Of a stretch of 10,434 bases of DNA, positions 1 to 10,434 are shown one piece after another. The stretch spans positions 1 through 10,434 of the IMG/VR virus record IMGVR_UViG_3300007812_000019, one strand, 5' to 3'. The notes under the pieces are model-generated. The model ran no database searches, was not told the origin of the DNA, and saw only the letters and a program-made list of their open reading frames with translations. How positions within the stretch are numbered: the stretch's first letter is position 1; each line of letters begins with the position of its first letter. The translations under genes were made by a program, and so were the position numbers.

Positions 1-885
1 GAAAACTATTACATCATTTTTTTCGAGATGGATTACACGTTCATTGCCTGTAAGGGATTGCGAATAGTCTCCTTTTGGTAACAATATTGCAGGATAAGAA
101 CCATATGTACCAACGACAGCTTCTGCAATAACATCAAGCGGTAACTTTTCAAGGAATTTTTGCAACTCAGGACTCTCAACATTTTCATTAGGTACAAATT
201 CCGCTGGTGGTATGGTAACGTTGCCATAAGTTTGTTCGTATTGAGATAGCAGGAAATCAGAAATATCATTTACAATTCCTTTGGGGATGAGTATAATGTG
301 CGGGTATAAGTCCTGTGAGGAAGAAGTGTAAATCGTATACGTGATATAGAAATTTTCTCGGATTGCAGGGTTAGATTCTAACGTTTGAATTAAAGTATTT
401 ACTTTTGCCTCAGCTGATTTCTTTTCTTCTTCTGATTTGCTGTTACCAAATGGGACGCGTGGATATAGCCTGACCACGTCAAAAATAAAATCTTTACTTG
501 TAGCATTTTGAATTACATTAACATTGATTCTCTTCTCATGGAGACTAAAACCGTATCCATTAATTGCCCTGCTGACATTACCTAAATTAAGGTGTATAGT
601 CTTTTCTTTACCCTTTTCGCCATATTTCACTTCTATGTCCTCTGGGTTCTTGATACTGTTTTTCCCATACGTAGTACTTATCTCCAGTACAAATGGCAAA
701 TATCCTTCCGAGTTCTCAAAAGTAAATGTTGCCATAGGCTTGTAGTTAACTAATGTTAACGATCCGTCGAACGTTTTTGACATTTGACTGTCAAATGCAA
801 AATCTTTAGATGAAATGAACTTATTAAAAACCTTGAAGAGATATTCATCTAACGGGATCAGCGATGAAGCATTGTTACTACTCAT
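1..885 (-). CDS. Hypothetical viral protein, 3'-truncated by the window edge (>=295 aa, MSSNNASSLIPLDEYLFKVF...); missing from the ORF track
   Basis: Manual translation gives ATG at 885 and a frame open to position 1. A minus-strand TATA-like TTTTTAATAA lies at ~920-929, with the palindromic motif at 900-911 between TATA and start. Confidence 0.85.
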   Translation of the reverse strand, partial: MSSNNASSLIPLDEYLFKVFNKFISSKDFAFDSQMSKTFDGSLTLVNYKPMATFTFENSEGYLPFVLEISTTYGKNSIKNPEDIEVKYGEKGKEKTIHLNLGNVSRAINGYGFSLHEKRINVNVIQNATSKDFIFDVVRLYPRVPFGNSKSEEEKKSAEAKVNTLIQTLESNPAIRENFYITYTIYTSSSQDLYPHIILIPKGIVNDISDFLLSQYEQTYGNVTIPPAEFVPNENVESPELQKFLEKLPLDVIAEAVVGTYGSYPAILLPKGDYSQSLTGNERVIHLEKNDVIVF

Positions 886-898
886 TTTTTACATCACT

Positions 899-912
899 CA
901 AACATATGTTTG
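899..912. promoter_or_regulatory. Palindromic operator-like site CAAACATATGTTTG between TATA box and start codon
   Basis: Perfect 14-bp palindrome; member of the AAACA-NN-TGTTT family. Confidence 0.7.
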
Positions 913-974
913 CTTGTAGTTATTAAAAAGTTTGCTTAAAAACGGACGAGGCAGACGCAAAAAAATGGAATCAC

Positions 975-1814
975 TTAAATTATGTGAAGACCGAACAGTA
1001 CTGCTAACATCATCATAGCCACTATACCGATCACGAAGTATAGCATTATCCTACCCATTGCTTGCACACGCTTACTCTCATTCTGCAACTTCAATAACTT
1101 CACTAAGTTTGCATTCATCTCCTTAACCGTCGTGGGTATCGTACTCAATATCTCCAACTCTTGCGATAACCTACGGCTAAGTAATAATTTAGGGTCAACA
1201 GCAATAGCGAGCTTTGTGGTAGGGGATAACGTTATAGAACCAGTAATCATTTTTTTAACCTTAGCCAACTGTGCTAATAATTCTGGTTCCGCTGTATCAT
1301 ACTCAGACACAGGTATTGACGTTTCTAACGTCTCTAACCTTATCGCATACGGCATTGTGTTGTTTTTTCTGATCGTGATCAGCAACGGTCTGTGAATTTT
1401 CCCGTATTGTATCATCCCTACCATTGATTCCGAGGTGACTGGGACAATTAGCTCTTCGCCCGTCACTGGGTCGTGGACTGTGTACAACGACGGCGATAAT
1501 TTTTCACCTATGTATAGTTGGGCAGACCTAGTTGATATGTCGACGTTCACCACTACAACGTCACTATTCTTAGAGCGACGGATTTGCCTTATCAGTCCTC
1601 CTCTTATTGGGTCTTTCATGTACGACCTTCTGAACGCTAAGTATACGACAATAAATACTATAAATAGTATACCTAGAGCGATGAAAATGTAAATAATTGG
1701 TGGGGATAATAGTGTTTGGAATAACGATAAAGCTGTAACATGTTGGGTTACATGTTGGTGTGGGGCTACCGTATTTGTTATTGTTACGTTTGAAGACGGT
1801 GGTTTCAGTGCCAT
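975..1814 (-). CDS. Membrane protein (279 aa) with N-terminal and C-terminal TM segments; probable virion or morphogenesis protein
   Basis: Hydrophobic stretches IIYIFIALGILFIVFIVVYLAF and IMLYFVIGIVAMMMLAVLFGL. TATA-like TTTAAAT ~25 nt upstream of the ATG (leaderless) and a T-run at 959-965 after the stop. Lies directly downstream of the MCP gene. Confidence 0.8.
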   Translation of the reverse strand: MALKPPSSNVTITNTVAPHQHVTQHVTALSLFQTLLSPPIIYIFIALGILFIVFIVVYLAFRRSYMKDPIRGGLIRQIRRSKNSDVVVVNVDISTRSAQLYIGEKLSPSLYTVHDPVTGEELIVPVTSESMVGMIQYGKIHRPLLITIRKNNTMPYAIRLETLETSIPVSEYDTAEPELLAQLAKVKKMITGSITLSPTTKLAIAVDPKLLLSRRLSQELEILSTIPTTVKEMNANLVKLLKLQNESKRVQAMGRIMLYFVIGIVAMMMLAVLFGLHII

Positions 1815-1862
1815 GTTAATATCTTAACAGAAAAGATTTAAAAGAAGAAGAAAGTCGCGAAA

Positions 1863-1874
1863 AAACACGTGTTT
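1863..1874. promoter_or_regulatory. Palindrome AAACACGTGTTT, 11 nt after the MCP stop and overlapping a minus-strand T6 run (possible terminator)
   Basis: Perfect palindrome; motif family member. Confidence 0.6.
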
Positions 1875-1885
1875 GACTTAGAGTT

Positions 1886-2356
1886 TTAACCAGTTTTGAA
1901 TTTTTGCATTATTATGGATATAATACCTGCCGCGATAAGAACTATTCCTGTTACTCCTAGCAGTACATATAGCGTTGGGAAGAAGCTGAAGAACGACACC
2001 ATACCGTTTACTAGTGGGTGTGTTAGGTTATACGCTAATGTTCCTGGTGACGGATTGCTTATTGCTGAGGCAGTAGCGGTAGCGAAGATAGATAGAATGA
2101 GACCAGATAGTCCTATTATCACACCGACAATCAGTAAGGCTATTGCTATTGTTGGTACGTCGAAATCGCCTGACCCAAACGTTACTTTGACTAACAACCC
2201 TACTCCTGGATCATGAATTCTAGTAGCTTTTTTTGTTTCTGGTACATCAACACCGTCTACATCTGGCATGTGGGCGTTAATTACCTTGAACATTTTTGCT
2301 TTTTTACCACCTGTTCCTGTTGCTTTTGCTGATGGAACGACTACTGAAACTGACAT
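1886..2356 (-). CDS. Major capsid protein of a large spindle-shaped virus (SMV1/ATV-like, Bicaudaviridae)
   Basis: Basic N-terminal region followed by two long hydrophobic helices (GDFDVPTIAIALLIVGVIIGLSGLILSIF...; FFPTLYVLLGVTGIVLIAAGIISII) with an N-L-T sequon in the loop. Closely resembles the SMV1 MCP as I recall it; not searched. Confidence 0.85.
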   Translation of the reverse strand: MSVSVVVPSAKATGTGGKKAKMFKVINAHMPDVDGVDVPETKKATRIHDPGVGLLVKVTFGSGDFDVPTIAIALLIVGVIIGLSGLILSIFATATASAISNPSPGTLAYNLTHPLVNGMVSFFSFFPTLYVLLGVTGIVLIAAGIISIIMQKFKTG

Positions 2357-2369
2357 TTTTCTTCATCTA

Positions 2370-2396
2370 AAACATCTGTTTGAGGCGTTAATAAAC
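2370..2396 (-). promoter_or_regulatory. MCP promoter: TATA (TTTATTAA, ~2388-2395) with AAACATCTGTTT (2370-2381) near the expected transcription start
   Basis: Same layout as the promoters at ~900-930 and ~5050-5078. Confidence 0.65.
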
Positions 2397-2470
2397 TTTT
2401 CGCTTCGCTGTTTCTGATATGGAAAGTGAATAGGGACAGTTTCAGCCCAACCAGTTAGACAGAAATAAGC

Positions 2471-2486
2471 GTAAAACTTATAATTT
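2471..2486 (+). promoter_or_regulatory. BRE/TATA (GTAAAACTTATAATTT), probable promoter of the hairpin-RNA plus mini-CRISPR transcript
   Basis: Purine-rich BRE followed by TTATAA. The expected TSS (~2505-2510) coincides with the start of the GC-rich hairpin, and no sizeable + strand gene follows. Confidence 0.6.
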
Positions 2487-2508
2487 AGAACATCCCAGAA
2501 CAGAAATT

Positions 2509-2581
2509 GGGTACCCCCGTAGCGGGGTATCCTATATATGGGGCGCCCCGCGGGGGTGTGGCGTAGCTTGCCTGCCCCCGT
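2509..2581 (+). ncRNA. Putative structured RNA (two GC-rich hairpins and a central palindrome) forming the 5' part of the mini-CRISPR transcript
   Basis: 51/73 GC. Hairpin 1 at 2509-2532 has a 9-bp stem and loop CGTAGC. GGGGCGCCCC lies at 2540-2549. Hairpin 2 at 2550-2581 also has CGTAGC at its apex and ends on the base before repeat 1. Confidence 0.55.
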
Positions 2582-2662
2582 GTTGAAATAAGGAAGAACT
2601 GAAAGTTTTCTATATGTCTCTTTAACGTCTCTACCTCAGTTGAAATAAGGAAGAACTGAAAT
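2582..2662 (+). CRISPR. Virus-borne mini-CRISPR array: 2 x 24-bp repeat GTTGAAATAAGGAAGAACTGAAA(G/T), one 33-bp spacer, no cas genes in the window
   Basis: Repeats at 2582-2605 and 2639-2662 are 23/24 identical. Length and the ACTGAAAG 3' end match Sulfolobales-type repeats (8-nt Cas6 handle). Spacer 2606-2638 is TTTTCTATATGTCTCTTTAACGTCTCTACCTCA. Confidence 0.85.
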
Positions 2663-2796
2663 TGATTCTCGTTAATTTAGTTCTAACCTTCTTTCATCCT
2701 CAATTAACAAGGTTAAGGTGGTATTCGTATATAGCTAGCGTAGCATCGAAAAGGCTTAAAGAGTTTTAGAGGAAGTTAACAAAAGTCCACTTTCCT

Positions 2797-3267
2797 TCAT
2801 ATTCGTTCCTGCAACCTACCTAAAACCTTATCTCTAATTAGTGAATAACCCCAGTATTCTGGGTATTTCTTATAGACGTAGTTTAGAATCTCGTCTTTAC
2901 TCTTCCTAACCCATTCCCTGAAAAACGTCTCAATCTCCTTTTCCTCTTCCTCAGGTTTAAATTCGCTATTTAAAACGTATTTCCTTATGTATCCTATTAT
3001 TGCTTCGCTCAGCGGATCTCTTACTTCCTCTTCCTCCTCCACGCAAACCTCTCCTAATTCGATCAATTTGTCAATATAATCCTGTAATTTCGACGAATAA
3101 GCACCGAAGAACCAAGGCTTAAAATCCAGCCCTAGTTGTACTCCTTTCTCCTTCTCAAGTAAAAAGAAGATCTTCTGCAGTTTAGTCGGAGTGACCTCTG
3201 TATTCTCCTCTTTAGCGGTATAAAGCAACAGTTTGATTAAGCGGTAAATTCTGTCCTCGGTTAACAT
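2797..3267 (-). CDS. Panacea/SocA (DUF4065, YwgA-like) antitoxin-domain protein, orphan
   Basis: Motifs TKLQKIFFLL, FKPWFFGAYS and C-terminal LNYVYKKYPEY. Start moved from 3285 to the ATG at 3267 because the TATA (TTTATA, 3300-3305) is too close to 3285. Confidence 0.75.
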   Translation of the reverse strand: MLTEDRIYRLIKLLLYTAKEENTEVTPTKLQKIFFLLEKEKGVQLGLDFKPWFFGAYSSKLQDYIDKLIELGEVCVEEEEEVRDPLSEAIIGYIRKYVLNSEFKPEEEEKEIETFFREWVRKSKDEILNYVYKKYPEYWGYSLIRDKVLGRLQERI

Positions 3268-3334
3268 AACCAACCCTAATATCATACACAGAGAATGAAT
3301 ATAAATTTGGTAGGGGTTTGAGCTTCATTGCCTA

Positions 3335-3346
3335 AAACAGCTGTTT
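3335..3346. promoter_or_regulatory. Palindrome AAACAGCTGTTT in a divergent promoter region
   Basis: Perfect palindrome between two divergent TATA boxes (~3302 on minus, ~3358 on plus). Confidence 0.65.
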
Positions 3347-3394
3347 ATGAAAGACTTATATTACGGACACAGGAATTTTGTACTGGGAATAAAA

Positions 3395-4027
3395 ATGGAG
3401 CAAAGTGAGATAGCCAAAATTATATTCGATAGAGTAGTGGATTATTGTACAAGGCACAATGACGAACCGCTTGCGTGCATGGCAGATCATGAACCAGACC
3501 AATTATCAGTGTTCATAGATTCGTATCTTAAAGACGAAGAAGACGAAGCGATAGAAAATTCAGACGAAAAGTTCTGGAGAGCGATAGAAAAAGAGTACAA
3601 GAAGTTGTGGAAAGAATGGTGGAGTGAAGAACTAGCCTATAATCTAGGTCATCTAATACTGGAGTCGAAAGTAGAACGTATAATGCAAGATGATGAGCTT
3701 GATAATGCAACTAAAGTTAGATACCTAAAAGCTTACGAAGAGGTATTAAATAAGTTCGCCGATGCGATCAAGCGTGAATTACAAGATAGGGATTCATTGC
3801 CCTCTGTGGAATTGTATAAGTGGTTCAAGAGGCTGGCTGAAGCTACCTCATCCTTTAACTCAGATTATCGCGAAGAAGTAAAATATCTTCTGGACTTTTA
3901 TGATATGTGGGACGTTGATCAACAACAGGTGTTAAGCCTTTTGCTAGATTATATAGATAGGACATTATACAAAATAGAACATAAGTATCTGCCTGAATTA
4001 GAGGGTTTAACAAATAATAATAGTTAA
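3395..4027 (+). CDS. Hypothetical acidic alpha-helical protein (~210 aa)
   Basis: Long D/E-rich ORF. TATA CTTATATT at ~3355-3362 favours the ATG at 3395 over 3347, and a T-run follows the stop. Confidence 0.8.
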   Translation: MEQSEIAKIIFDRVVDYCTRHNDEPLACMADHEPDQLSVFIDSYLKDEEDEAIENSDEKFWRAIEKEYKKLWKEWWSEELAYNLGHLILESKVERIMQDDELDNATKVRYLKAYEEVLNKFADAIKRELQDRDSLPSVELYKWFKRLAEATSSFNSDYREEVKYLLDFYDMWDVDQQQVLSLLLDYIDRTLYKIEHKYLPELEGLTNNNS

Positions 4028-4049
4028 ACTTTTTTAAATCTAGATGCAT

Positions 4050-4445
4050 TTAGTAGTTAAGTAATATATTGTTGTTGCCCTCTTCTTTCTCTTTTGATTT
4101 TTCCATTTTTTCTAAGGCTTTTATAGCTTCTCTAAACGGATTAGTGCATTCGCCTTCTCCTTCTCCGTAACAGCCATATTCCTCTATTGCTCTGTCCCAG
4201 TTCCTTTCCGCGTCTTCGAGTGCGTCAAGTGGGAAGCGTCCTACACCGTATACATATTCCTTAACCCAGGATTTGTATACTGCAATGTAAAAATCATGGA
4301 ATGGTAATTTGTTGCCATCATTCTCTACTCGATATACTACGACAGCACTAGGCTCCTTACTTTCCTCATCCCTAAACCAGAGTACTTCTTGTATGAGTGC
4401 TTTCCAAGTTTTACCATCCCAAGATAGGTCTTTTACCTCCATCAT
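4050..4445 (-). CDS. Small acidic protein, paralogue of 8853-9191; HicB-N-like motif; anti-defence candidate
   Basis: Shares DFYIA, GVG...ALE.AER.W, NPFREA and C-terminal NILxNY with its paralogue. Start could be GTG 4454, ATG 4445 or ATG 4442. Confidence 0.8.
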   Translation of the reverse strand: MMEVKDLSWDGKTWKALIQEVLWFRDEESKEPSAVVVYRVENDGNKLPFHDFYIAVYKSWVKEYVYGVGRFPLDALEDAERNWDRAIEEYGCYGEGEGECTNPFREAIKALEKMEKSKEKEEGNNNILLNY

Positions 4446-4477
4446 TTTTATCACTGAGTAACATGTTTGTAAAACAG

Positions 4478-4515
4478 ATATTTAAACACATATGTTTGAG
4501 GGATTTGTTAAGCAT
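4478..4515 (-). repeat. Duplicated promoter block, copy 1 (TATA TTTAAATA plus motif ACACATATGTTT)
   Basis: 35/38 identical to 9225-9262. Confidence 0.85.
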
Positions 4516-4523
4516 TCTCTGTG

Positions 4524-4579
4524 TTGACTTCCTCTCCACCCTGGAAGAGTGAGGCTTTCCACCTCTTAACCCTCAATTT
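4524..4579 (-). mobile_element. 56-bp IS200/IS605-family end remnant (fused left and right end with one hairpin; PATE/MITE-like)
   Basis: Minus strand reads TTTAA|AAATTGAGGGTTAAGAGGTGGAAAGCCTCACTCTTCCAGGGTGGAGAGGAAGTCAA. It resembles Sulfolobales IS605 termini as I recall them, has a 5' TTTAA target motif and a 3' TCAA end, and contains an imperfect hairpin. Confidence 0.6.
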
Positions 4580-4617
4580 TTAAAAAGGAGTTAGCAGATA
4601 AAACAATAGTGAGCAAC

Positions 4618-4779
4618 ATGGGTATAGGGATATTATTCTTAATAGCGATAGCGTTGTCTGTATTTGAAATAATTTTAGGTATCTTAATCCATATTACAAC
4701 TAAAGAAGATGCGGATTTAATTGTAATACTTGCAGGCATTTTAGGATTAATAGGAATATTTCTAATATCTGCGTTTTAA
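4618..4779 (+). CDS. Small two-TM membrane protein (53 aa, MGIGILFLIAIALSVFEIILGILIHITTKEDADLIVILAGILGLIGIFLISAF); missing from the ORF track
   Basis: Clean ATG to TAA, hydrophobic hairpin pattern, TATA-like TTTTTAAA at 4577-4584. Confidence 0.65.
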   Translation: MGIGILFLIAIALSVFEIILGILIHITTKEDADLIVILAGILGLIGIFLISAF

Positions 4780-4818
4780 TTTTCCTCTTTATTTAGGCTT
4801 ATCGTCCGTTTTGTCGGC

Positions 4819-5037
4819 TTAGGTATATTTCCTATATATTATCATGACTGCAACTAAAGCTATTGCCAAAATTACGAATGCCCACAACATATAGTTTACG
4901 ATATTCGCAACTGGAGTAAATGAACTCCCGTCTATCGTGTAAAATATTCCAGTAAAGTCGTTTGCCAAAACGATGATAAACAGTAGGAACGGTATTAGGA
5001 CAAAAACTGCAATAAAGAATACTGCAAACGGGTTCAA
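4819..5037 (-). CDS. Small two-TM membrane protein (72 aa)
   Basis: Two hydrophobic helices and a basic C-terminal tail. TTG start, TATA at ~5070-5078 and motif at 5050-5061. Confidence 0.7.
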   Translation of the reverse strand: MNPFAVFFIAVFVLIPFLLFIIVLANDFTGIFYTIDGSSFTPVANIVNYMLWAFVILAIALVAVMIIYRKYT

Positions 5038-5049
5038 CTTGTATCACTT

Positions 5050-5061
5050 AAACATATGTTT
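5050..5061. promoter_or_regulatory. Palindrome AAACATATGTTT between TATA and start
   Basis: Perfect motif copy. Confidence 0.65.
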
Positions 5062-5091
5062 GGACAGTGTTTAAAAAAAGTTTACTGGGGT

Positions 5092-5415
5092 TTAACGCTG
5101 ACCTCCTTCTTTCAGGAGGTGTTTCCATATTGCGATTCTTATGAGTTCGCTCATATGAATCTGGTTCTGTTCGGCAATTCGTTTTAGCCCGTCTAACATC
5201 TCTTCATTGATTTTAACACTTGTTCTCGTCTTCTCGTCTACTGGGATGGATAGGGCTACTGCTATTATATCATCCTTTGTTATACCTTCATGGATAAGGT
5301 TATTTATAGCGTCCCTCATCACTAAAGATCTGTTCTTACTCTTAGAATCAATAATTTCAATTGCTCTATGCTCTATTCTAAACGAAACAATTCTTTTTTT
5401 CGCGGGATTCCCCAT
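5092..5415 (-). CDS. Tandem ribbon-helix-helix (CopG/Arc-like) DNA-binding protein, 107 aa
   Basis: Two RHH patterns: RIVSFRIEHRAIEIID...NRSLVMRDAI and RTSVKINEEMLDGLKRIAEQNQIHMSELIRIAI. Confidence 0.8.
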   Translation of the reverse strand: MGNPAKKRIVSFRIEHRAIEIIDSKSKNRSLVMRDAINNLIHEGITKDDIIAVALSIPVDEKTRTSVKINEEMLDGLKRIAEQNQIHMSELIRIAIWKHLLKEGGQR

Positions 5416-5573
5416 GATTATGTTCTTGCTTGTCAGATTATTTTTAAAATAGCAGGAATTAAGGAGTGAGAGTGTTTACCCGTGGCGTAACTTATCTTTA
5501 GTTTGAAGGCATTCATTACTTGACCATTTACTCTCATAGTTGTCTCCTCCCTCCGTGAGGACAAGTAGTTCAT

Positions 5574-5585
5574 AAACAACTGTTT
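5574..5585. promoter_or_regulatory. AAACAACTGTTT upstream of the methyltransferase TATA (TTTTTTAAG, ~5592-5600)
   Basis: Motif copy. Confidence 0.6.
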
Positions 5586-5624
5586 GACCACTTTTTTAAG
5601 TGTAACATACACAAGATAAAGATC

Positions 5625-6362
5625 ATGAATTTCAAAATGCTTAAGGCGTATATGTCCACATATGATAACCCGTTACATGTCATGTTTAGGACTGCATTAA
5701 ACAGGTTCCCTTTCACAGCGAACTTAAGGAACGGGTTGGAAGTGGAAATAAAGTCTAAAAGGCACGCCTGGTTTTTTTCGACGTTACACGACCTTGACAT
5801 CATTTTTGCCAATGATATATTTATACAATTTAGGTACAAGGACAGGATACTAAAATTCTATTTCGATATAAATAATTTCGTAGCTTTCGGGGAAATTTTC
5901 AGAGACGATATATATAATGTTGATGTGAAAGGAAGGACAGTAGTTGATGTCGGTGCGGGGATAGGCGATTCGTCAATTTATTTTGCGTTGAACGGTGCAA
6001 AGAAAGTCTATGCATTTGACGTTAATGTGTCGTACTTAGAGAAGAACATAAAGGAAAACAATCTAAAAGACGTCGTTGAGCCGATTCGTTGTGAGTGTGG
6101 ACTTTCGAATAATTTAGATATTATAACTCTGAAATACAATATTCCTTATGGGTCTGTACTTAAAGTCGATTGTGAGGGGTGTGAATACGGTTTCTTTGGT
6201 GTGGCTCCGCCACGTTTGATTAGTAGATATCATGCAATTATTATAGAATATCATAACGGCGTTCAACATCTTGCGGATCTACTTAGAGCATCAGGGTTTA
6301 ACGTTGTAATTCGAGGGAACAAGAAGAAGATCGGCTTGATATATGCAAGGCGACTAAGATGA
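5625..6362 (+). CDS. FkbM-family SAM-dependent methyltransferase
   Basis: VVDVGAGIGDSSIYFA (SAM-binding motif I), KKVYAFD, LKVDCEGCEY, IIIEYH. Confidence 0.9.
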   Translation: MNFKMLKAYMSTYDNPLHVMFRTALNRFPFTANLRNGLEVEIKSKRHAWFFSTLHDLDIIFANDIFIQFRYKDRILKFYFDINNFVAFGEIFRDDIYNVDVKGRTVVDVGAGIGDSSIYFALNGAKKVYAFDVNVSYLEKNIKENNLKDVVEPIRCECGLSNNLDIITLKYNIPYGSVLKVDCEGCEYGFFGVAPPRLISRYHAIIIEYHNGVQHLADLLRASGFNVVIRGNKKKIGLIYARRLR

Positions 6363-7354
6363 AGTATGACCCGCGAATAGCCCAATTACGTTTCTTCGCG
6401 TCTTTGTCAGTTGCTTTATATCATCTGTGGACTCTTCAGATAGTCCCCCTTGCGTTTTTCCGTCCTGGTTGGCTAGGTGTTCCGTTGTTTTTCGAGTTAT
6501 CGATATTTCTCCTCATGAGCAGACTAGATGAAAACCCCTCGCTCTCCCGTTATTTCAAAAGAAGGGTGAGGAGGATATGGCCACTTTATTTCCTCGTCGT
6601 CGTCGTAGTATTCTTAGCCGACAGATATATGTTCAATCTGAGGGTGACATATTACGACTTGTTACTCCATTTTGTGTTCGTTTCCTTCGTTCTTACACCG
6701 TTTTCCTTTCATTACCTCTTCTGGTCTCTTCAGCTGGAAGAATGGATGTACTTAGCTATCCCCTTCATTCATGCAATGGATGATAAAGCAAAGTTTCAAA
6801 CAGCTGTTTTGTTGGTTTTTATATCGTTTTCCTATAGTCTCTTTATCGTCCTCCTCCCCTACAACGAGTTCCACTTACTTTACCTTATGCCACCCTTCTG
6901 GTTAGGGGCATATGGGTGGGGGATAATTGCTTACCTTTTGAAGAAGAAACAGAAAGATGAACAAACCAACAAAAAAGCCAAATATTTCATACTAATACTT
7001 TACGCTCAATATGTTTTTACTGCATTGGTATTTTCCTCTAATAATGAATTTGTATATGAGCTCTTCACAAGGTTCTTGATTTACAACCTGGCGTTACCCG
7101 CTTTCGCCCTCCTTATTCTGAACCCACCTAAAGTACTTAATCGTATAACGGTCTTCCTTGGAGAGGTAAGCTACGGGGTCTATCTGTGGACTTTACTATT
7201 TCAGGAACTTTTCGGAGTAGCTGGAATACTTTACGGCATCCTGACAGCTATCGCTACGGAGTTCCCATTAAGAAGAGGAGAAATAATAAGTAGGTTGAGT
7301 TACTCCTCAGTCCCGTCTGGGAAAAAAGTTTCACATTTTCGCAATAATGTATAG
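6359..7354 (+). CDS. Acyltransferase family 3 (OafA/YrhL-like) integral membrane O-acyltransferase
   Basis: LRFFASLSVALYH, GVPLFFELS, YFKRRVRRIWPLY, FWSLQLEEWMY, LGEVSYGVYLW. ATGA overlap with the methyltransferase indicates translational coupling. Confidence 0.92.
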   Translation: MKYDPRIAQLRFFASLSVALYHLWTLQIVPLAFFRPGWLGVPLFFELSIFLLMSRLDENPSLSRYFKRRVRRIWPLYFLVVVVVFLADRYMFNLRVTYYDLLLHFVFVSFVLTPFSFHYLFWSLQLEEWMYLAIPFIHAMDDKAKFQTAVLLVFISFSYSLFIVLLPYNEFHLLYLMPPFWLGAYGWGIIAYLLKKKQKDEQTNKKAKYFILILYAQYVFTALVFSSNNEFVYELFTRFLIYNLALPAFALLILNPPKVLNRITVFLGEVSYGVYLWTLLFQELFGVAGILYGILTAIATEFPLRRGEIISRLSYSSVPSGKKVSHFRNNV

Positions 7355-8251
7355 GTAGTCTTCTCTGAGTTGCTTATATTTCACGTAAGCTTCGTCTGGT
7401 AGTAACCTTGGTGTATACACTACATGTGAATACTTCTTTTTTAGCTCGTTCTTAAGTATAAGCCCGACGTTAACACTGTTATAATCTCTAAGCGGGTATT
7501 TAGTTTTTAGTAATTTCCCAGCAATATTCACAACGTTCTTGTACACGTGTGCCTCAGATGTAGTCATCGTCCGTGGTACTACTGTTATAGCATACGACGA
7601 TGGCATAGCTTTCATCAATACACCAGACAGTCTCGTTTCCGACGGTATAGTCAAAAGCACGTTACTGAACTTTATCGCCCATGTCTGTGCGTATTTATGT
7701 ATCTTTTCTAGTCTCAGTCTATCCATTTTACCTACCTGCTTCCCGAAACCTATTCCAGCGTCGTCTATAATTATCATCGGGATCTTATTTATTCCGTAAT
7801 TTTTCATTGCCTCAATTAGGTCGTCGAGTTGCAGAGGGTCGATAATTATGTGGGCGATGGCGACGTCCCAGTCGCCGTACAGTGCATAGGCGAGCCACAA
7901 CGCTAATGAGGATTTCCCTCCCCTAGCCTCCCCACTGATGATCGTAGTTTGACCAGTATCTATTGGTACAGGTCTAATTTTCATGAACTTGTGTTCCTTT
8001 CTGTCTATCGCTATTTGGTATATTGTATGCATCATGAGAACCGTTAAATCGGCAATACCTTCCATGTAATATTTTCTGGACAAGTCAATATACTGCTTCT
8101 CCATGTAGGGAAAATCAATGAACTTTACATTGCCCTCATACACCTGTGTGTAGTATTTATCGAACATGGGCAATAACGTATTGTAATCTACTTTCAACAG
8201 TGCCTTCTCTGGGTCTGTGTCGTTCAATTTTATATAATCATTTATTCGCAT
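7331..8251 (-). CDS. P-loop ATPase (ASCE group; possible genome packaging or extrusion ATPase)
   Basis: Walker A GEARGGKS and Walker B IIIDD. The ATG at 8251 follows an SD-like GGGTGG and overlaps the end of the upstream gene (track start 8269). Confidence 0.8.
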   Translation of the reverse strand: MRINDYIKLNDTDPEKALLKVDYNTLLPMFDKYYTQVYEGNVKFIDFPYMEKQYIDLSRKYYMEGIADLTVLMMHTIYQIAIDRKEHKFMKIRPVPIDTGQTTIISGEARGGKSSLALWLAYALYGDWDVAIAHIIIDPLQLDDLIEAMKNYGINKIPMIIIDDAGIGFGKQVGKMDRLRLEKIHKYAQTWAIKFSNVLLTIPSETRLSGVLMKAMPSSYAITVVPRTMTTSEAHVYKNVVNIAGKLLKTKYPLRDYNSVNVGLILKNELKKKYSHVVYTPRLLPDEAYVKYKQLREDYLYIIAKM

Positions 8252-8756
8252 CAACTTCCACCCTTTCAAGAATTTCTTTTTTAAGAACCTGGTAATCTTC
8301 AGGCTTCCAGAACTTCAATATACTGTATTTGTCTCTTTGGTCTCTCTCAAACACAACTGGTTTGAGTAATTTGATCTTCACAGTGCTTACTTTTTGCCCC
8401 GAAGGATATACATATTTTATAATAAGGTTCTGGTCGTCAAATTGCAGATCATAGACCTTCCTGGGGAGAAATAGTAAACTAGTAACATTGTATCTATGAT
8501 CTTCTTTCGCTAATTTTACAACTATTTTCTCTGGAAATAATAAAACGTTGTATATACCCCTCTTTTTCACGTTTATTGTTACTGAAGTCTTGGATTTCCT
8601 TTTAGCTTCTGGGTCGTTACAATCTGCTTGTAATAGCTCATACACATCATCGCTTATTTCCCTGACCTTGTAACACTCCCAAGGGAACGAAAATATAGGT
8701 AGGTCGTGGTTGCGTGTCTTTATTCTCCTTATTTTTTTCCTGTACCCTCTCCTCAT
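8238..8756 (-). CDS. Hypothetical basic protein (172 aa), coupled to the ATPase
   Basis: Arg/Lys-rich N-terminus, TATA at ~8779-8786, stop overlaps the ATPase start. Confidence 0.75.
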   Translation of the reverse strand: MRRGYRKKIRRIKTRNHDLPIFSFPWECYKVREISDDVYELLQADCNDPEAKRKSKTSVTINVKKRGIYNVLLFPEKIVVKLAKEDHRYNVTSLLFLPRKVYDLQFDDQNLIIKYVYPSGQKVSTVKIKLLKPVVFERDQRDKYSILKFWKPEDYQVLKKEILERVEVDANK

Positions 8757-8829
8757 GTCTATAACTTAACATATTTGCTTTAAAAATAATGGATGAGTAA
8801 GGGGTCAGGGCTTGTCGTTCGCTTCGTTA

Positions 8830-8843
8830 AAAACACCTGTTTT
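8830..8843. promoter_or_regulatory. AAAACACCTGTTTT, ~10 nt after the stop of the 8853-9191 gene
   Basis: Motif copy in the same post-stop position as 1863-1874. Confidence 0.55.
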
Positions 8844-8852
8844 GGTCTATAT

Positions 8853-9191
8853 TTAGTAGTTATTCAATATGTTGTCATCTTTATTTGATAACTCAAAAGC
8901 CTCTCTAACTTTTAATTTTTCTAAAGCCTCTCTGAATGGATTTGGATACTCGTCACCTTTTTCTCTTTTCCATTCCCTTTCCGCGTTTTCAAGTGCGGAT
9001 TCGATATCCGATCCTACTCCCCACACTGCTTCATATGATTTGTTATAAAACGTCGCAATGTAGAAATCTCCGAAATATATGTCGTTATTGTCGTCATTAT
9101 TCTCTATTTTGTACACAAAGACACCACCACCGTCCACACGCTCAAAGAATACTTCTTTTACGGTTACTTTCCCAACTATTTTATCCAGCAT
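8853..9191 (-). CDS. Small acidic protein (112 aa), paralogue of 4050-4445; HicB-N-like motif
   Basis: GVGSDIESALENAEREW, NPFREAL, DDNILNNY. The track start (9236) lies upstream of the TATA, so the ATG at 9191 is preferred. Confidence 0.8.
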   Translation of the reverse strand: MLDKIVGKVTVKEVFFERVDGGGVFVYKIENNDDNNDIYFGDFYIATFYNKSYEAVWGVGSDIESALENAEREWKREKGDEYPNPFREALEKLKVREAFELSNKDDNILNNY

Positions 9192-9224
9192 TCTAATCCC
9201 CAAGTATACGTGTTTGCCAAGCAA

Positions 9225-9262
9225 ATATTTAAACACATATGTTTGATGGATTTGCTAAGTAT
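9225..9262 (-). repeat. Duplicated promoter block, copy 2
   Basis: 35/38 identical to 4478-4515. Confidence 0.85.
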
Positions 9263-9410
9263 GATAACCCATTTACAAACGGCTTAGCAACTTGTTGGGG
9301 ATATTAATGCTGTTTGTAGCATTAAAGATATGAATAAGGCTTTACGGTTGAAAAATCAAGAACCGATGCAAAGTTAAATATACTATTCTACTATATTAGT
9401 TTTGGTAACT

Positions 9411-10031
9411 ATGTTAGCTAACCTTTCTCTCCTTTTAGAAGAATATTTCCCTGTCCGCTTAGAGGAGATGTGGGATTATTTAGCCAAACAGTATGAGTAT
9501 GAGGGTATGCTAATGTTAATCCTAAATGAAGATAAAGACAGGTCAAAAATACTCTCAAAAGAAGCTGAAAAAATAAAGAAAGATTTTGGATTTATGTTTG
9601 GCAGTAACGTAACCATAGAAGAATACGTTAATATGGTAATGAACGGGTTACAAAAACTTATTGACGGGTTGAAGAAAAATGAAGATGAGTTCTACAAAGA
9701 GGTATTAAATTCTGATAACCCTAATTTCCTAATAACCACTTATTATTCGTTGTATTTACGCTTCGTAACAAAAGTATACTTAAAACTACACAAGGTTGAC
9801 GCGAAAACAAAAGATTCTAGGATTAAAGATATATTCAACATCGCTAATTTCTTAGTAGGATTTTTCGGGATGCCTATACTACTATATATAAAGAAAAAAG
9901 AAGTATTCCCTTATATATCTGAGCTAAGCGGAGCATTATTACACGCACTAGTTGCCGATAGGACGCCTATACCCTCAAATGACTCCTTAGGATATTACCT
10001 ATTTTTCAGGATCCACGCTGATAACTCATAA
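9411..10031 (+). CDS. Hypothetical alpha-helical protein (~206 aa)
   Basis: Long ORF with TATA TTAAATATA at ~9374-9382. Start is ATG 9411 or TTG 9402. Confidence 0.78.
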   Translation: MLANLSLLLEEYFPVRLEEMWDYLAKQYEYEGMLMLILNEDKDRSKILSKEAEKIKKDFGFMFGSNVTIEEYVNMVMNGLQKLIDGLKKNEDEFYKEVLNSDNPNFLITTYYSLYLRFVTKVYLKLHKVDAKTKDSRIKDIFNIANFLVGFFGMPILLYIKKKEVFPYISELSGALLHALVADRTPIPSNDSLGYYLFFRIHADNS

Positions 10032-10065
10032 CTGTTAGCAGAAGGTGCTGAAGAGCCTTAGAGCT

Positions 10066-10079
10066 AAAACATATGTTTT
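10066..10079. promoter_or_regulatory. Palindrome AAAACATATGTTTT overlapping the BRE/TATA of the last gene
   Basis: Perfect 14-bp palindrome abutting TTTTTAATA. Confidence 0.68.
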
Positions 10080-10105
10080 TAATACACGAACTAAATAATC
10101 TTCTT

Positions 10106-10434
10106 ATGGGACTAATAGGTTCACTGGCAACTGTGTTTTACAGAATCAACGAAGGTATAATATACTCAACTTTTCTCGTCGATCTACTGGTAACCCTGAT
10201 TGACTTCAATGAGTATTCAACAAATCCCGCACTTGCAAATTACATATCGTTATTGTTGTCGTTCAACCTAGTACTGTACCTGGAACATATTCTAGGGAGT
10301 ATATTTCAGAATGCTGGCATAATAGCAGGAGGAGTAATAGCAGGGCTTGCTACTATTTCTGCATTATTCACTAGGAATTACCTCCTGAACTTGTCACAAC
10401 AAGAGATGAGTACTATGCAAGTAATCTTCATTTA
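10106..10434 (+). CDS. Membrane protein, 3'-truncated by the window edge (MGLIGSLATVFYRINEGIIYSTFLVDLLV...); missing from the ORF track
   Basis: ATG at 10106, ~25 nt after the TATA. Frame is open to the window end and has several hydrophobic segments. Confidence 0.75.
   Translation, partial: MGLIGSLATVFYRINEGIIYSTFLVDLLVTLIDFNEYSTNPALANYISLLLSFNLVLYLEHILGSIFQNAGIIAGGVIAGLATISALFTRNYLLNLSQQEMSTMQVIFI

What the first reader, a model, noticed from the sequence alone, without database searches (positions are those of the whole stretch)
900..10078. Window-wide palindromic motif AAACA-NN-TGTTT marks most transcription units
Perfect copies occur at 900, 1863, 2370, 3335, 5050, 5574, 6798, 8831 and 10067, and one-mismatch copies at 4486 and 9233. 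Ten of the 11 are intergenic. A rough hand estimate assuming ~64% AT gives well under 0.1 perfect copies expected per window. There are three positional classes: between TATA and start (900, 2370, 5050), at or upstream of BRE/TATA (3335, 4486, 5574, 9233, 10067), and 10-11 nt after a stop codon over a T-run (1863, 8831). Inference: one dimeric master regulator, or a genome organisation signal, controls both capsid and accessory genes. I saw no copy in the mini-CRISPR promoter itself.
Basis: partly seen in the sequence, partly recalled or inferred. Interest (0 to 1): 0.72.

Follow-up and report, generated by a model that had tools for sequence, protein, structure and literature searches.

The report
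Conserved palindromic operator in monocaudavirus promoters
A short palindromic DNA word, present at about 30 places per genome in one clade of tailed spindle viruses of Sulfolobus, sits at fixed distances from most promoters and is almost certainly the docking site of one sequence-specific regulator, which gives a direct way to study how these viruses control their genes.

Summary
AAACA-NN-TGTTT occurs 9 times perfectly in the window, against 0.01 expected.

The window is a whole 10.4-kb metagenomic contig of a Sulfolobus monocaudavirus related to SMV1, SMV3 and SMV4. Those genomes carry 28, 31 and 30 perfect copies (about 0.2 expected). 74 of the 98 copies lie in the 12-14% of DNA that is intergenic.

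The full element is an 18-bp palindrome, CTCAAACA[G/T][C/A]TGTTTGAG. Spacing is strictly 2 bp. At orthologous intergenic sites the 10 core bases are 229/230 identical, while flanks are about 80-83% identical.

Sites sit at a few fixed positions relative to the TATA box:
- between TATA and the transcription start (capsid and virion genes)
- overlapping TATA or BRE
- 25-80 bp upstream (accessory genes)

The motif is degenerate in SMV2. It is absent from ATV, and from the parts scanned of ATSV and STSV2, as well as from SIRV2 and SSV1.

Best reading: it is the operator of a clade-specific global regulator. The leading candidate, unproven, is a single-chain tandem ribbon-helix-helix protein encoded in the window (5092-5415, minus strand). 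Whether it activates or represses is not settled. I found no description of the motif in the searchable literature.

The parts
900..911 (.). Perfect site (centre TA). [quoted passage not shown]
   Evidence: identical at the orthologous promoters of SMV1, SMV3 and SMV4
1863..1874 (.). Perfect site (centre CG). Lies 11 nt after the stop of the capsid gene, about 20 nt upstream of the TATA box and 48 nt upstream of the ATG of gene 975-1814 (minus strand, homologue of SMV1 gp04).
   Evidence: orthologous sites at SMV1 1386 and SMV4 1242
2370..2381 (.). Perfect site (reads AAACAGATGTTT in the gene's direction). Lies between TATA and the start of gene 1886-2356 (minus strand), the homologue of SMV1 gp03, the major capsid protein: TATA, about 8 nt, core, 13 nt, ATG.
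   Evidence: PMC12199143 names gp03 as the major capsid protein and the most highly expressed gene
3335..3346 (.). Perfect site (centre GC) in a divergent intergenic region. It abuts the ATG of gene 3347-4027 (plus strand) and lies about 25 nt upstream of the TATA box of gene 2797-3285 (minus strand).
4484..4497 (.). Variant site AAACA-N4-TGTTT, directly abutting the TATA box (BRE position) of gene 4050-4454 (minus strand), which encodes an acidic protein. It equals the canonical site plus 2 bp.
5050..5061 (.). Perfect site (centre TA) between TATA and the start of gene 4832-5047 (minus strand), the homologue of SMV1 gp51, a small hydrophobic (probably membrane) protein.
5092..5415 (-). Candidate cognate regulator: a 107-aa single-chain tandem ribbon-helix-helix protein, homologous to SMV1 gp50.
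   Evidence: Pfam RHH_1 E=1.8e-8. PHROG 876 'transcriptional repressor'. Two RHH repeats in the alignment. AlphaFold2 model pLDDT 90.8 with strand-helix-helix, a linker helix, then strand-helix-helix. Best solved-structure matches are ~110-residue chains of the F-plasmid relaxosome, TM about 0.65, which I take from memory to be TraY. The family has only 21 members, all in SMV-like contigs.
5574..5585 (.). Perfect site (centre AC), 6 nt upstream of the TATA box (BRE position) of the methyltransferase-acyltransferase operon that starts at 5625 (plus strand). It is 158 nt upstream of the ATG of the ribbon-helix-helix gene.
   Evidence: SMV4 has the same AC-centred site at 50978
6798..6809 (.). 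Perfect site inside the acyltransferase gene 6359-7354 (frame 1, peptide QTAVLL), conserved in SMV1 at 47058.
8831..8842 (.). Perfect site (centre CC). Lies 10 nt after the stop of gene 8853-9236, about 40 nt upstream of the TATA box and 74 nt upstream of the ATG of the operon containing the SMV1 gp46 homologue and the DnaA-like gene (8756, minus strand).
9231..9244 (.). Variant site AAACA-N4-TGTTT abutting the TATA box of gene 8853-9236 (minus strand), the paralogue of 4050-4454.
   Evidence: a canonical N2 form lies at SMV3 58535, upstream of a family member
10067..10078 (.). Perfect site (centre TA) whose right half runs into the TATA box (TGTTTTTAATA) of the SMV1 gp45 homologue that starts at 10106 (plus strand).
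   Evidence: conserved in SMV1, SMV3 and SMV4

Best explanation
The motif is the core of an 18-bp palindromic operator, CTCAAACA[G/T][C/A]TGTTTGAG. One sequence-specific DNA-binding protein, peculiar to the SMV1/3/4-type monocaudaviruses, recognises it as a dimer or pseudo-dimer.

Binding at about 30 sites per genome ties most viral promoters into a single regulon. The expected effect depends on where the site sits:
- Between TATA and the transcription start (capsid and virion genes), or overlapping TATA or BRE: bound protein should compete with RNA polymerase or with TBP/TFB, and so repress.
- 25-80 bp upstream (accessory and putative anti-defence genes): it could recruit the basal factors, or start protein spreading along the DNA.

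The most likely protein is the virus's own 107-aa single-chain tandem ribbon-helix-helix protein (window 5092-5415, minus strand; SMV1 gp50).

Shown: the element's reality, its extent, its spacing specificity, its phasing to promoters, purifying selection on it, and its clade restriction.

Inferred: that a protein binds it, which protein that is, and the sign of regulation.
For: Over-representation:
- Window: 9 copies against 0.01 expected.
- SMV1, SMV4 and SMV3: 28, 30 and 31 against about 0.2 expected.
- Nine further SMV-like metagenomic contigs carry 0.4-0.8 copies per kb.

Specificity: only the 2-bp spacer is enriched. In SMV1, AACA-N2-TGTT occurs 37 times against 1.7 expected, while N0, N1 and N3 are at expectation.

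Extent: symmetric flanks extend the element to 18 bp. At -3 to -1 the frequencies are C 0.55, T 0.71, C 0.52.

Location: 74 of 98 copies are intergenic against 12-14% intergenic DNA, binomial P about 7e-44.

Selection: at orthologous intergenic sites of SMV1 compared with SMV3 and SMV4, core identity is 229/230 and flank identity 0.80-0.83.

Phasing:
- TATA, 8-10 nt, core, 9-14 nt, ATG.
- TTTTT abutting the core, so that TATA overlaps the left half-site.
- Core abutting or overlapping BRE/TATA.
- Core 25-80 nt upstream of TATA.

SSV1's mapped promoters put the transcription start 22-26 nt after box A. By that measure the first class covers roughly -14 to -2.

Clade restriction:
- SMV2 keeps only 3 perfect copies, and 8 of 10 alignable orthologous positions are degenerate.
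- ATV has 0 copies. ATSV has 1 and STSV2 has 0 in the 50 kb scanned of each.
- SIRV2 and SSV1, viruses of the same host genus, have 0.
- None of the 80 listed matches (of 88) to the 18-mer in 185,579 species genomes is a Sulfolobales genome.

Candidate protein:
- It is the only conserved protein with a recognisable DNA-binding domain among those tested against Pfam and PHROGs.
- It is confidently modelled as a tandem ribbon-helix-helix.
- Its family is confined to SMV-like contigs.
- By my manual register against the RHH_1 consensus, the DNA-facing strand residues are S11/R13 and S66/K68. These four are invariant in all 22 sequences and pseudo-symmetric, which fits a palindromic target.
Against: No binding data exist.

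The tandem ribbon-helix-helix gene is also intact in SMV2, with the same strand residues, yet the motif has largely decayed there. Its phyletic match to the motif is therefore imperfect, and it is confounded with phylogeny.

Its own promoter has no nearby operator in the window; the nearest is 158 nt from the ATG. In SMV4 the nearest is 79 nt from the ATG. So the classical autoregulation signature is weak.

The capsid gene gp03 carries a perfect site between TATA and the start, yet it is the most highly expressed SMV1a gene at all times. Other genes with the same architecture are 'early' (gp05, gp06) or 'full-time/late' (gp11), and gp09, with the TATA-overlapping form, is also early (PMC12199143). 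Simple tight repression at these sites is therefore not supported, and positional class does not map simply onto timing.

Copies inside genes are about 100 times over chance and partly conserved. A pure promoter-operator model does not explain this.
Confidence: 0.65

Rival explanations
1. Positive promoter-identity element. The palindrome is recognised by a viral, or virus-modified, factor that directs the host transcription machinery to viral promoters and raises their output, rather than repressing them. At the sites between TATA and the start it would also serve as the AT-rich region that melts first.
For: The genes with the site between TATA and the start include the most abundantly and earliest expressed virion genes (PMC12199143). 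In this class the centre is almost always TA (CATATG). It is GC where the site overlaps TATA or lies upstream. This would fit a melting constraint at about -7 to -4.
Against: From general knowledge of archaeal transcription, no archaeal activator is known to act from between TATA and the start. The same word also occurs overlapping TATA or BRE, up to 80 nt upstream of TATA, and inside genes. That spread does not fit a core-promoter element with a fixed geometry.
Confidence: 0.2
2. Host-encoded transcription factor site that this virus clade has adopted.
For: No viral protein's presence tracks the motif cleanly except an acidic family that is unlikely to bind DNA. The decay in SMV2 could reflect a different host. 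The half-sites resemble the host Ara-box AACATGTT, which is bound by XylR (PMC7264815).
Against: Other viruses of the same hosts have no copies: STSV2 in the 50 kb scanned, SIRV2 and SSV1. The Ara-box spacing (N0) is not enriched, 2 observed against 1.5 expected. None of the listed matches to the 18-mer is in a Sulfolobales genome. I could not count the bare 12-mer in a host genome.
Confidence: 0.12
3. Genome-architecture signal. The sites are binding points for a protein that condenses, packages, partitions or replicates the genome, and their closeness to promoters is secondary.
For: Copies inside genes are far over chance, partly conserved, and frequent in the 6-kb gene gp09. A DnaA-like gene lies in the window (7331-8269).
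Against: The tight phasing to TATA boxes and start codons, and the roughly sixfold intergenic enrichment, are not expected for packaging or origin sites. Gaps of up to 4.8 kb exist, for example across SMV1 gp10. Conservation is much stronger at intergenic sites than at coding sites, 0.996 against 0.92.
Confidence: 0.08
4. RNA-level element: a hairpin that acts as a terminator or as a 5' untranslated-region structure.
For: Two window sites follow stop codons and run into T-runs. The longest version, in SMV1 at 44068-44093, can form a hairpin of -16 kcal/mol.
Against: Typical sites fold at only -0.4 to -5 kcal/mol at 37 C, with z-scores near 0 for three of four window sites. That is negligible at the roughly 75-80 C at which these hosts grow. 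In the commonest class the transcription start falls at or after the 3' end of the core, so the palindrome is not transcribed whole.
Confidence: 0.03
5. Shared microhomology that serves as a recombination junction between gene modules, maintained by mosaic exchange.
For: Several blocks of homology between genomes end exactly at the motif edge (the partial hits). Similarity to SMV4 ends at window position 4497, the edge of a variant site.
Against: Intergenic homology-block ends within 10 nt of a site are only 1.6-1.9 times over an intergenic null, and the ends are not independent of each other. This would in any case be a by-product of a conserved operator, not an explanation for why it is conserved.
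Confidence: 0.05

Closest known systems
Archaeal regulators whose effect depends on site position (Thermococcales TrmBL1/Tgr with the TGM palindrome; SurR). From my own knowledge, not tested here.
   Same: One palindromic motif is found downstream of TATA at some promoters, where it represses, and upstream of BRE/TATA at others, where it activates. One protein thereby switches two gene sets in opposite directions.
   Different: Those are cellular winged-helix regulons of central metabolism. Here the regulon is a whole viral genome, the motif is different, the protein is unidentified, and the sign of regulation is untested.
Ribbon-helix-helix regulators of crenarchaeal viruses: SSV1 F55, SIRV1 SvtR, AFV6 AvtR (review PMC5569661)
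   Same: Small virus-encoded ribbon-helix-helix proteins bind repeats at or near viral promoters. F55 sites overlap the transcription start and BRE. SvtR and AvtR act from sites up to about 80 bp from TATA, probably by spreading. From memory of the primary AvtR paper, AvtR is also a single-chain double ribbon-helix-helix.
   Different: Their reported motifs are different and degenerate, with few sites per genome: SvtR binds its own promoter and three other sites (PMC5569661); from memory AvtR has about eight candidate targets. The consensus sequences are ATnnTTCAAnAnnnnnAAAATG, ATnnTnnTAnnACnTT and ATAGATAGAGT. Here a perfect 10/10 core occurs about 30 times. The window protein has no significant sequence relation to AvtR (hhalign probability 9.9%).
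Stoperators of cluster A mycobacteriophages such as L5. From my own knowledge.
   Same: Two to three dozen copies of one short repressor-binding word are scattered through a viral genome, mainly in short intergenic gaps, and give genome-wide control by one protein.
   Different: Stoperators are asymmetric, oriented with transcription, and block elongation. This element is a palindrome phased to TATA boxes in an archaeal virus.
SMV2 regulatory sequence with inverted repeats overlapping BRE, and the proposed leucine-zipper protein gp37 (PMC11065993)
   Same: Same virus group. That paper predicts that an inverted repeat at BRE is a repressor site for putative anti-defence genes. Some of the SMV3 and SMV4 genes it lists (SMV3 gp46, gp69, gp71; SMV4 gp02, gp61) have the present palindrome upstream.
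   Different: That paper treats single-gene promoters with strong BRE/TATA. Its text does not describe this palindrome, its genome-wide spread or its presence at virion-gene promoters. SMV2 is the one relative in which this palindrome is nearly lost. The sequence logos are figures that I could not read.
Sulfolobales Ara-box AACATGTT and its activator XylR (PMC7264815)
   Same: A palindrome with the same AACA/TGTT half-sites, located upstream of BRE, and essential for activation.
   Different: The half-sites abut in the Ara-box. Here they are separated by exactly 2 bp, and the abutting form is not enriched.
aCcr1-box and the viral aCcr1 homologues of bicaudaviruses (PMC9976878)
   Same: A small ribbon-helix-helix protein, with homologues in ATV and SMV3, binds a short palindromic box between TATA and the start codon and represses.
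   Different: The box is a different 9-bp sequence, A(T/G)G(A)TA(G)A(T/G)TACN, in host cell-division promoters. The protein is a single-repeat ribbon-helix-helix, not the tandem protein of this window.
F-plasmid TraY (the ~110-residue E, F and G chains of the relaxosome structures 9f0x-9f12; chain identity from my own knowledge)
   Same: It is the best structural match to the modelled window protein (TM about 0.65, rmsd 2.6-2.9 A over 100 residues). Both are single polypeptides with two ribbon-helix-helix repeats that form one DNA-binding unit.
   Different: Sequence identity is 11% and the Foldseek E-value about 3e-3. TraY is a conjugation accessory protein that binds asymmetric sites at oriT.

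Membership tests
Transcription-factor operator or regulon motif | Statistical over-representation of a defined word | tested here: met
   9 against 0.01 in the window; 28-31 against about 0.2 in SMV1, SMV3 and SMV4
Transcription-factor operator or regulon motif | Dyad symmetry with a fixed half-site spacing | tested here: met
   Only the N2 spacer is enriched; symmetric flanks extend the element to 18 bp
Transcription-factor operator or regulon motif | Enrichment in non-coding DNA and fixed phasing to core promoter elements | tested here: met
   74 of 98 copies are intergenic against about 13% intergenic DNA; distances to TATA and ATG fall into discrete classes
Transcription-factor operator or regulon motif | Conservation above the neutral flanks in related genomes | tested here: met
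   Core 229/230 identical against flanks 0.80-0.83 at intergenic sites
Transcription-factor operator or regulon motif | Specific binding by a protein, and an effect on transcription | not testable with these tools
   Needs gel-shift, footprinting, chromatin immunoprecipitation or in vitro transcription
Stoperator-type genome-wide repressor sites | Asymmetric site oriented with the direction of transcription | tested here: not met
   The site is a perfect palindrome
Sulfolobales Ara-box (XylR) | Motif AACATGTT with abutting half-sites | tested here: not met
   The N0 form is at expectation, 2 against 1.5 in SMV1, while N2 is 37 against 1.7
aCcr1-box | 9-bp box A(T/G)G(A)TA(G)A(T/G)TACN | tested here: not met
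   The sequence differs from the motif (one search compared)
Intrinsic terminator or RNA hairpin | A stable stem-loop followed by a T-run | tested here: not met
   Window sites fold at -0.4 to -5 kcal/mol; no terminator-like call falls on any site; only two sites have a T-run
Ribbon-helix-helix superfamily (candidate protein 5092-5415) | Strand-helix-helix repeat with a match to the family model | tested here: met
   Pfam RHH_1 at 34.5 bits against a cut-off of 20.5; the model has two strand-helix-helix units, pLDDT 90.8
AvtR family (AFV6 gp29) | Detectable sequence homology to AvtR | tested here: not met
   hhalign probability 9.9% over 30 columns; not found in the search of solved-structure sequences
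TraY-like single-chain tandem ribbon-helix-helix | Two ribbon-helix-helix repeats in one chain that superpose on TraY | tested here: inconclusive
   TM about 0.65, rmsd 2.6-2.9 A, 11% identity, E about 3e-3. The architecture is shared; common descent is not shown.

The most novel reading that the evidence does not exclude
The palindrome is the address label of a genome-wide switch peculiar to chronic monocaudaviruses. A single-chain tandem ribbon-helix-helix protein occupies about 30 operators, including ones inside genes. It thereby sets the whole viral transcription programme: holding virion genes at a sustainable level while turning on accessory and anti-defence genes. Possibly it also marks viral promoters as distinct from host promoters, given that relatives of this virus encode homologues of the ATV RNA-polymerase inhibitor. 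That would be the first whole-genome operator network described for an archaeal virus.
Probability: 0.2. Interest if true: 0.8.

Novelty: new member of a known kind. Interest (0 to 1): 0.55.

Why it matters
Gene regulation in archaeal viruses is known from a handful of regulators, each with a few degenerate sites. Here one nearly invariant 18-bp word sits at a perfect copy for 37-45% of the transcription units of a well-studied model virus group; SMV1 and SMV1a grow in laboratory strains of S. islandicus.

This offers three things:
- a ready-made probe for fishing out the regulator
- a set of natural promoter architectures (site downstream of TATA, over TATA, over BRE, and far upstream) for testing how position sets the sign of regulation in the archaeal transcription system
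- a possible explanation for the 'complicated' temporal pattern reported for SMV1a.

The motif is also a simple diagnostic for assigning metagenomic contigs to this clade.

Tried and rejected
1. Bacterial-type promoter and terminator scan. Not informative for an archaeal virus, and no terminator call falls on a site.
2. RNA hairpin idea. The stems are too weak.
3. Pattern scan of viral contigs with 14 specified bases. Fetching loci through the DnaA-like protein and by exact protein look-up worked better.
4. 18-mer scan of 185,579 species genomes. There were 88 scattered hits, none Sulfolobales among the 80 listed, so it revealed no proviruses and no host regulon.
5. Phyletic profiling of SMV1 proteins. 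Only the gp01/gp02 acidic family matches the motif's distribution. Its members are strongly acidic and often tandem-fused, so I rejected it as the DNA binder without modelling it. gp44 is also present in ATSV, which lacks the motif, so it was rejected too.
6. Pfam and PHROG searches of about 20 conserved small SMV1 proteins and 16 window proteins. No second DNA-binding candidate emerged.
7. Sequence search of the candidate against solved structures. Only a weak hit to the pRN1 ORF56 ribbon-helix-helix protein.
8. Mosaic-breakpoint test. The excess is weak and the data points are not independent.
9. Literature. No paper in the library contains the motif or describes it. The original SMV1 genome paper (Erdmann et al. 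2014) did not turn up in the library searches and I could not read it, so prior mention there cannot be excluded.
10. Correlating positional class with SMV1a temporal class. Only the few genes named in the text could be used, because no supplementary tables are held.

Full report
**What the window is.** The window is the whole of a 10,434-bp viral contig, IMGVR_UViG_3300007812_000019. Longer versions of the same virus exist, the longest being a 23.7-kb JGI contig of which 18.5 kb was fetched as L141. By nucleotide similarity it is a monocaudavirus (Bicaudaviridae):
- positions 1-4497 match SMV4 at 89%
- positions 4816-10434 match SMV1 and SMV1a at 86%
- part of the window matches SMV3 at 82%.

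My gene map rests on ORFs, tblastn against SMV1 and family searches. Genes are given as start-end and strand, with the SMV1 homologue where there is one:
- 1-885 (-), gp05 virion protein, 5' part only
- 975-1814 (-), gp04
- 1886-2356 (-), gp03, which PMC12199143 calls the major capsid protein
- 2797-3285 (-)
- 3347-4027 (+)
- 4050-4454 (-), acidic protein
- 4618-4779 (+), small membrane protein
- 4832-5047 (-), gp51
- 5092-5415 (-), gp50, ribbon-helix-helix protein
- 5625-6362 (+), methyltransferase
- 6359-7354 (+), acyltransferase
- 7331-8269 (-), DnaA-like protein
- 8238-8756 (-), gp46
- 8853-9236 (-), acidic paralogue of 4050-4454
- 9411-10031 (+)
- 10106 onward (+), gp45

**Checking the observation.** The two 'one-mismatch' copies are real. 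They are better described as the canonical word with a 4-bp instead of a 2-bp centre, at 4484-4497 and 9231-9244. A related SMV3 promoter has the normal form (SMV3 58535). Ten of the eleven sites are intergenic.

**The motif is a property of a clade, not of this contig.**
- SMV1 has 28 perfect copies, SMV4 has 30 and SMV3 has 31, each against about 0.2 expected.
- Nine further SMV-like metagenomic contigs have 0.4-0.8 copies per kb.
- An unbiased count of all 5+5 palindromes with gaps of 0-6 puts this word, and its sub-words, far ahead of anything else in SMV1 and in the window.
- Only the 2-bp spacing is enriched.
- Aligning all 98 sites shows symmetric extensions, C-T-C on the left and G-A-G on the right, and a centre that is almost always GC, TA, GA or TC. 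The full element is therefore the 18-bp palindrome CTCAAACA[G/T][C/A]TGTTTGAG. Beyond that the flanks carry no information, so the copies are not duplicated promoter cassettes.

**Where the sites lie.** 74 of 98 copies lie in the 12-14% of these genomes that is intergenic (binomial P about 7e-44). When the sites are sorted by distance to the nearest start codon, a small number of architectures appear:

1. TATA, 8-10 nt, core, 9-14 nt, ATG. This is used by the homologues of gp03, gp05, gp06, gp11, gp13, gp14 and gp51. The centre is almost always TA.
2. A T-run abutting the core, so that the TATA box (TTTTTAAA) overlaps the left half-site and the ATG follows at leaderless distance. This is used by gp09, gp16 and several accessory genes. 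The centre is GC.
3. The core abutting or overlapping BRE/TATA on the upstream side. Examples are window sites 5574 and 10067 and the two N4 variants.
4. The core 25-30 nt upstream of TATA, for example at gp38 and gp46.
5. The core about 75-80 nt upstream of the strong BRE/TATA of several SMV3 and SMV4 genes that PMC11065993 lists as putative anti-defence genes.

In SSV1, where promoters and transcription starts were mapped experimentally, the start lies 22-26 nt after the end of the box A hexamer. Applied to architecture 1, this puts the 12-bp core at about -14 to -2. That is the region occupied by RNA polymerase and melted at initiation. This last step is an inference, because no start-site data exist for these viruses.

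Genome-wide the figures are 37-45% and 49-58%.

**Evidence of selection.** For every SMV1 site I located the orthologous position in SMV3 and SMV4.

| Site type | Core positions identical | Flank identity |
|---|---|---|
| Intergenic | 229/230 | 0.80-0.83 |
| Coding | 175/190 | 0.84 |

The promoter alignments show the same thing directly: an invariant core in variable surroundings.

SMV2 shares nearly all core genes but has only three perfect copies. At the ten orthologous positions that could be aligned, eight are degenerate. A second virus of the SMV2 lineage (L145, 80% identical to SMV2) is intermediate, with five perfect and four one-mismatch copies in 14.5 kb.

The motif is absent or at chance level elsewhere:
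- ATV, whole genome: 0 copies
- ATSV, first 50 kb: 1 copy
- STSV2, first 50 kb: 0 copies
- SIRV2 and SSV1: 0 copies.

Among the matches listed for the 18-mer in one genome per species, none is from Sulfolobales.

**What it is.** The following features together are the signature of an operator bound by a dimeric or pseudo-dimeric sequence-specific protein:
- dyad symmetry
- strict spacing
- an 18-bp extent
- phasing to TATA boxes
- purifying selection strongest between genes
- restriction to one clade.

Other viruses of the same hosts lack the motif, and the extended word is missing from the listed Sulfolobales genomes, so a virus-encoded protein is more likely than a host one. I could not count the bare 12-mer in a host genome, so the host alternative stays open at low probability.

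**Which protein.** I searched the window proteins and about twenty conserved small SMV1 proteins against Pfam and PHROGs. Only one has a recognisable DNA-binding domain: the 107-aa product of 5092-5415 (-), homologous to SMV1 gp50.
- Its sequence contains two ribbon-helix-helix repeats.
- With a 22-sequence alignment, AlphaFold2 gives a confident model, pLDDT 90.8 and pTM 0.83, with the order strand-helix-helix, linker helix, strand-helix-helix.
- The best solved-structure matches are ~110-residue chains of the F-plasmid relaxosome, which I identify from memory as the naturally tandem ribbon-helix-helix protein TraY (TM about 0.65).
- It is not detectably related in sequence to AvtR, the tandem ribbon-helix-helix regulator of AFV6.
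- The family is tiny, 21 clusters, all at least 59% identical and all from SMV-like contigs.
- By my manual register against the RHH_1 consensus, the DNA-facing strand residues are S11/R13 and S66/K68. They are invariant in all 22 sequences and similar between the two repeats. That is what one would expect of a pseudo-symmetric sheet reading a palindrome. This is an inference.

Against this candidate:
- SMV2 keeps the gene with the same strand residues although its sites have decayed.
- The gene's own promoter has no close operator.

I therefore rate the candidate at roughly one in three to two in five.

The only protein family whose presence or absence mirrors the motif exactly is that of the window paralogues 4050-4454 and 8853-9236. 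It is strongly acidic and often tandem-fused. It looks like an anti-defence or DNA-mimic protein rather than a DNA binder.

**How it most likely works.** Established archaeal precedent comes from my own knowledge and from the review PMC5569661:
- A protein bound between TATA and the start blocks polymerase recruitment.
- One bound over BRE/TATA blocks TFB/TBP.
- One bound upstream can recruit TBP/TFB, or can seed spreading towards the promoter.

One protein acting on these different architectures would couple virion and accessory genes in a single switch. For a chronic, non-lytic virus, that could set a sustainable level of virion production.

The published SMV1a time course (PMC12199143) tempers this picture.
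- gp03 is the most highly expressed gene at every time point.
- gp05, gp06 and gp09 are early.
- gp11 is 'full-time/late'.
- All except gp09 carry architecture 1; gp09 carries architecture 2.

So repression at these sites is at most partial or conditional. A positive role, a promoter-identity or melting element, remains a live rival. The split in centres, TA in architecture 1 and GC elsewhere, would fit a melting constraint at about -7 to -4.

**What the model does not explain.** Copies inside genes are about 100 times more frequent than chance. They are mostly placed in the reading frame that encodes K-[Q/H]-[L/M]-F, and several are conserved across genomes. They could be internal promoters, decoys or roadblocks, or points of an architectural function. 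I could not tell which.

**Known or new.** Searches for the word itself and for the virus names together with promoter or motif terms found no description of the motif. PMC11065993 comes closest. It reports virus-specific regulatory sequences around strong promoters of putative anti-defence genes in SMV2, SMV3 and SMV4, and an inverted repeat over BRE in SMV2 with a proposed leucine-zipper repressor. Its text does not mention this palindrome, its genome-wide spread or its presence at virion-gene promoters. I could not see its logos.

The motif is distinct from the aCcr1-box, from the Ara-box and from the SvtR, AvtR and F55 sites.

I class it as a new member of a known kind: a viral global operator. 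It is notable for its copy number and its near-perfect conservation.

**Verdict.** Confidence that this is a protein operator is about 0.65-0.7. The identity of the protein and the sign of regulation are open, and both can be tested directly in laboratory strains.

Noticed in passing
window 2582-2604 and 2639-2661: Two identical 23-nt direct repeats with a 57-nt period, that is one spacer of about 34 nt, as in a mini-CRISPR. A GC-rich block lies just upstream at 2509-2580. No tRNA gene is present.
   Followed up: partly
window 4050-4454 (-) and 8853-9236 (-); also L137 4443-5090, L132 265-912 and SMV3 gp80: A family of very acidic small proteins (PHROG 21073), duplicated in the window and tandem-fused in relatives. 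It is present in SMV1/3/4-type viruses and was not found in SMV2, ATV, or the scanned parts of ATSV and STSV2, the same distribution as the palindrome. It is probably an anti-defence or DNA-mimic protein. In the window its promoters carry the 4-bp-spacer variant of the site.
   Followed up: partly
window 4625-4772: This 148-bp stretch is 93% identical to Acidianus tailed spindle virus, far above the rest of the window. It covers a 53-aa membrane ORF (4618-4779, plus strand) and suggests recent transfer between distant bicaudaviruses.
   Followed up: no
ATV (L006 and L010), e.g. 7457, 7535, 39421, 40402, 50686: ATV lacks the motif but has AACAGCTGTT nine times against 0.10 expected, with R...Y rather than A...T flanks. 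Most copies lie inside genes and two lie in a repeated gene. This may be a diverged relative of the same system, or something else.
   Followed up: partly
SMV1 7278, 9003, 9657, 23880, 27904, 34638, 37656; window 6798: Copies of the palindrome inside genes are about 100 times over chance. Most lie in the frame encoding K-[Q/H]-[L/M]-F and several are conserved across genomes. This is unexplained.
   Followed up: partly
all sites, SMV1/3/4 and the window: The centre dinucleotide tracks the promoter architecture. It is TA when the site lies 8-10 nt after TATA. It is GC when TATA overlaps the left half-site or when the site is upstream.
   Followed up: partly
SMV1 (L001) 16772-17233, gene gp11: The RefSeq start of gp11 is probably too far upstream. 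A TATA box, the palindrome at 16864 and an ATG at 16886 match the shorter gene annotated in SMV1a, SMV3 and SMV4.
   Followed up: partly
L141 14968-15354 (the same virus, beyond the window): The homologue of SMV1 gp06 ('major head protein') hits Pfam RIP_P131-like, the family of the ATV RNA-polymerase inhibitor ORF145. Its promoter carries a site between TATA and the start.
   Followed up: no
window 5433-5573: About 140 nt lie between the ribbon-helix-helix gene and site 5574 that SMV4 lacks. SMV1 has a MITE, and SMV3 a transposase, at the same place. This looks like a hot spot for insertions next to the operator.
   Followed up: no
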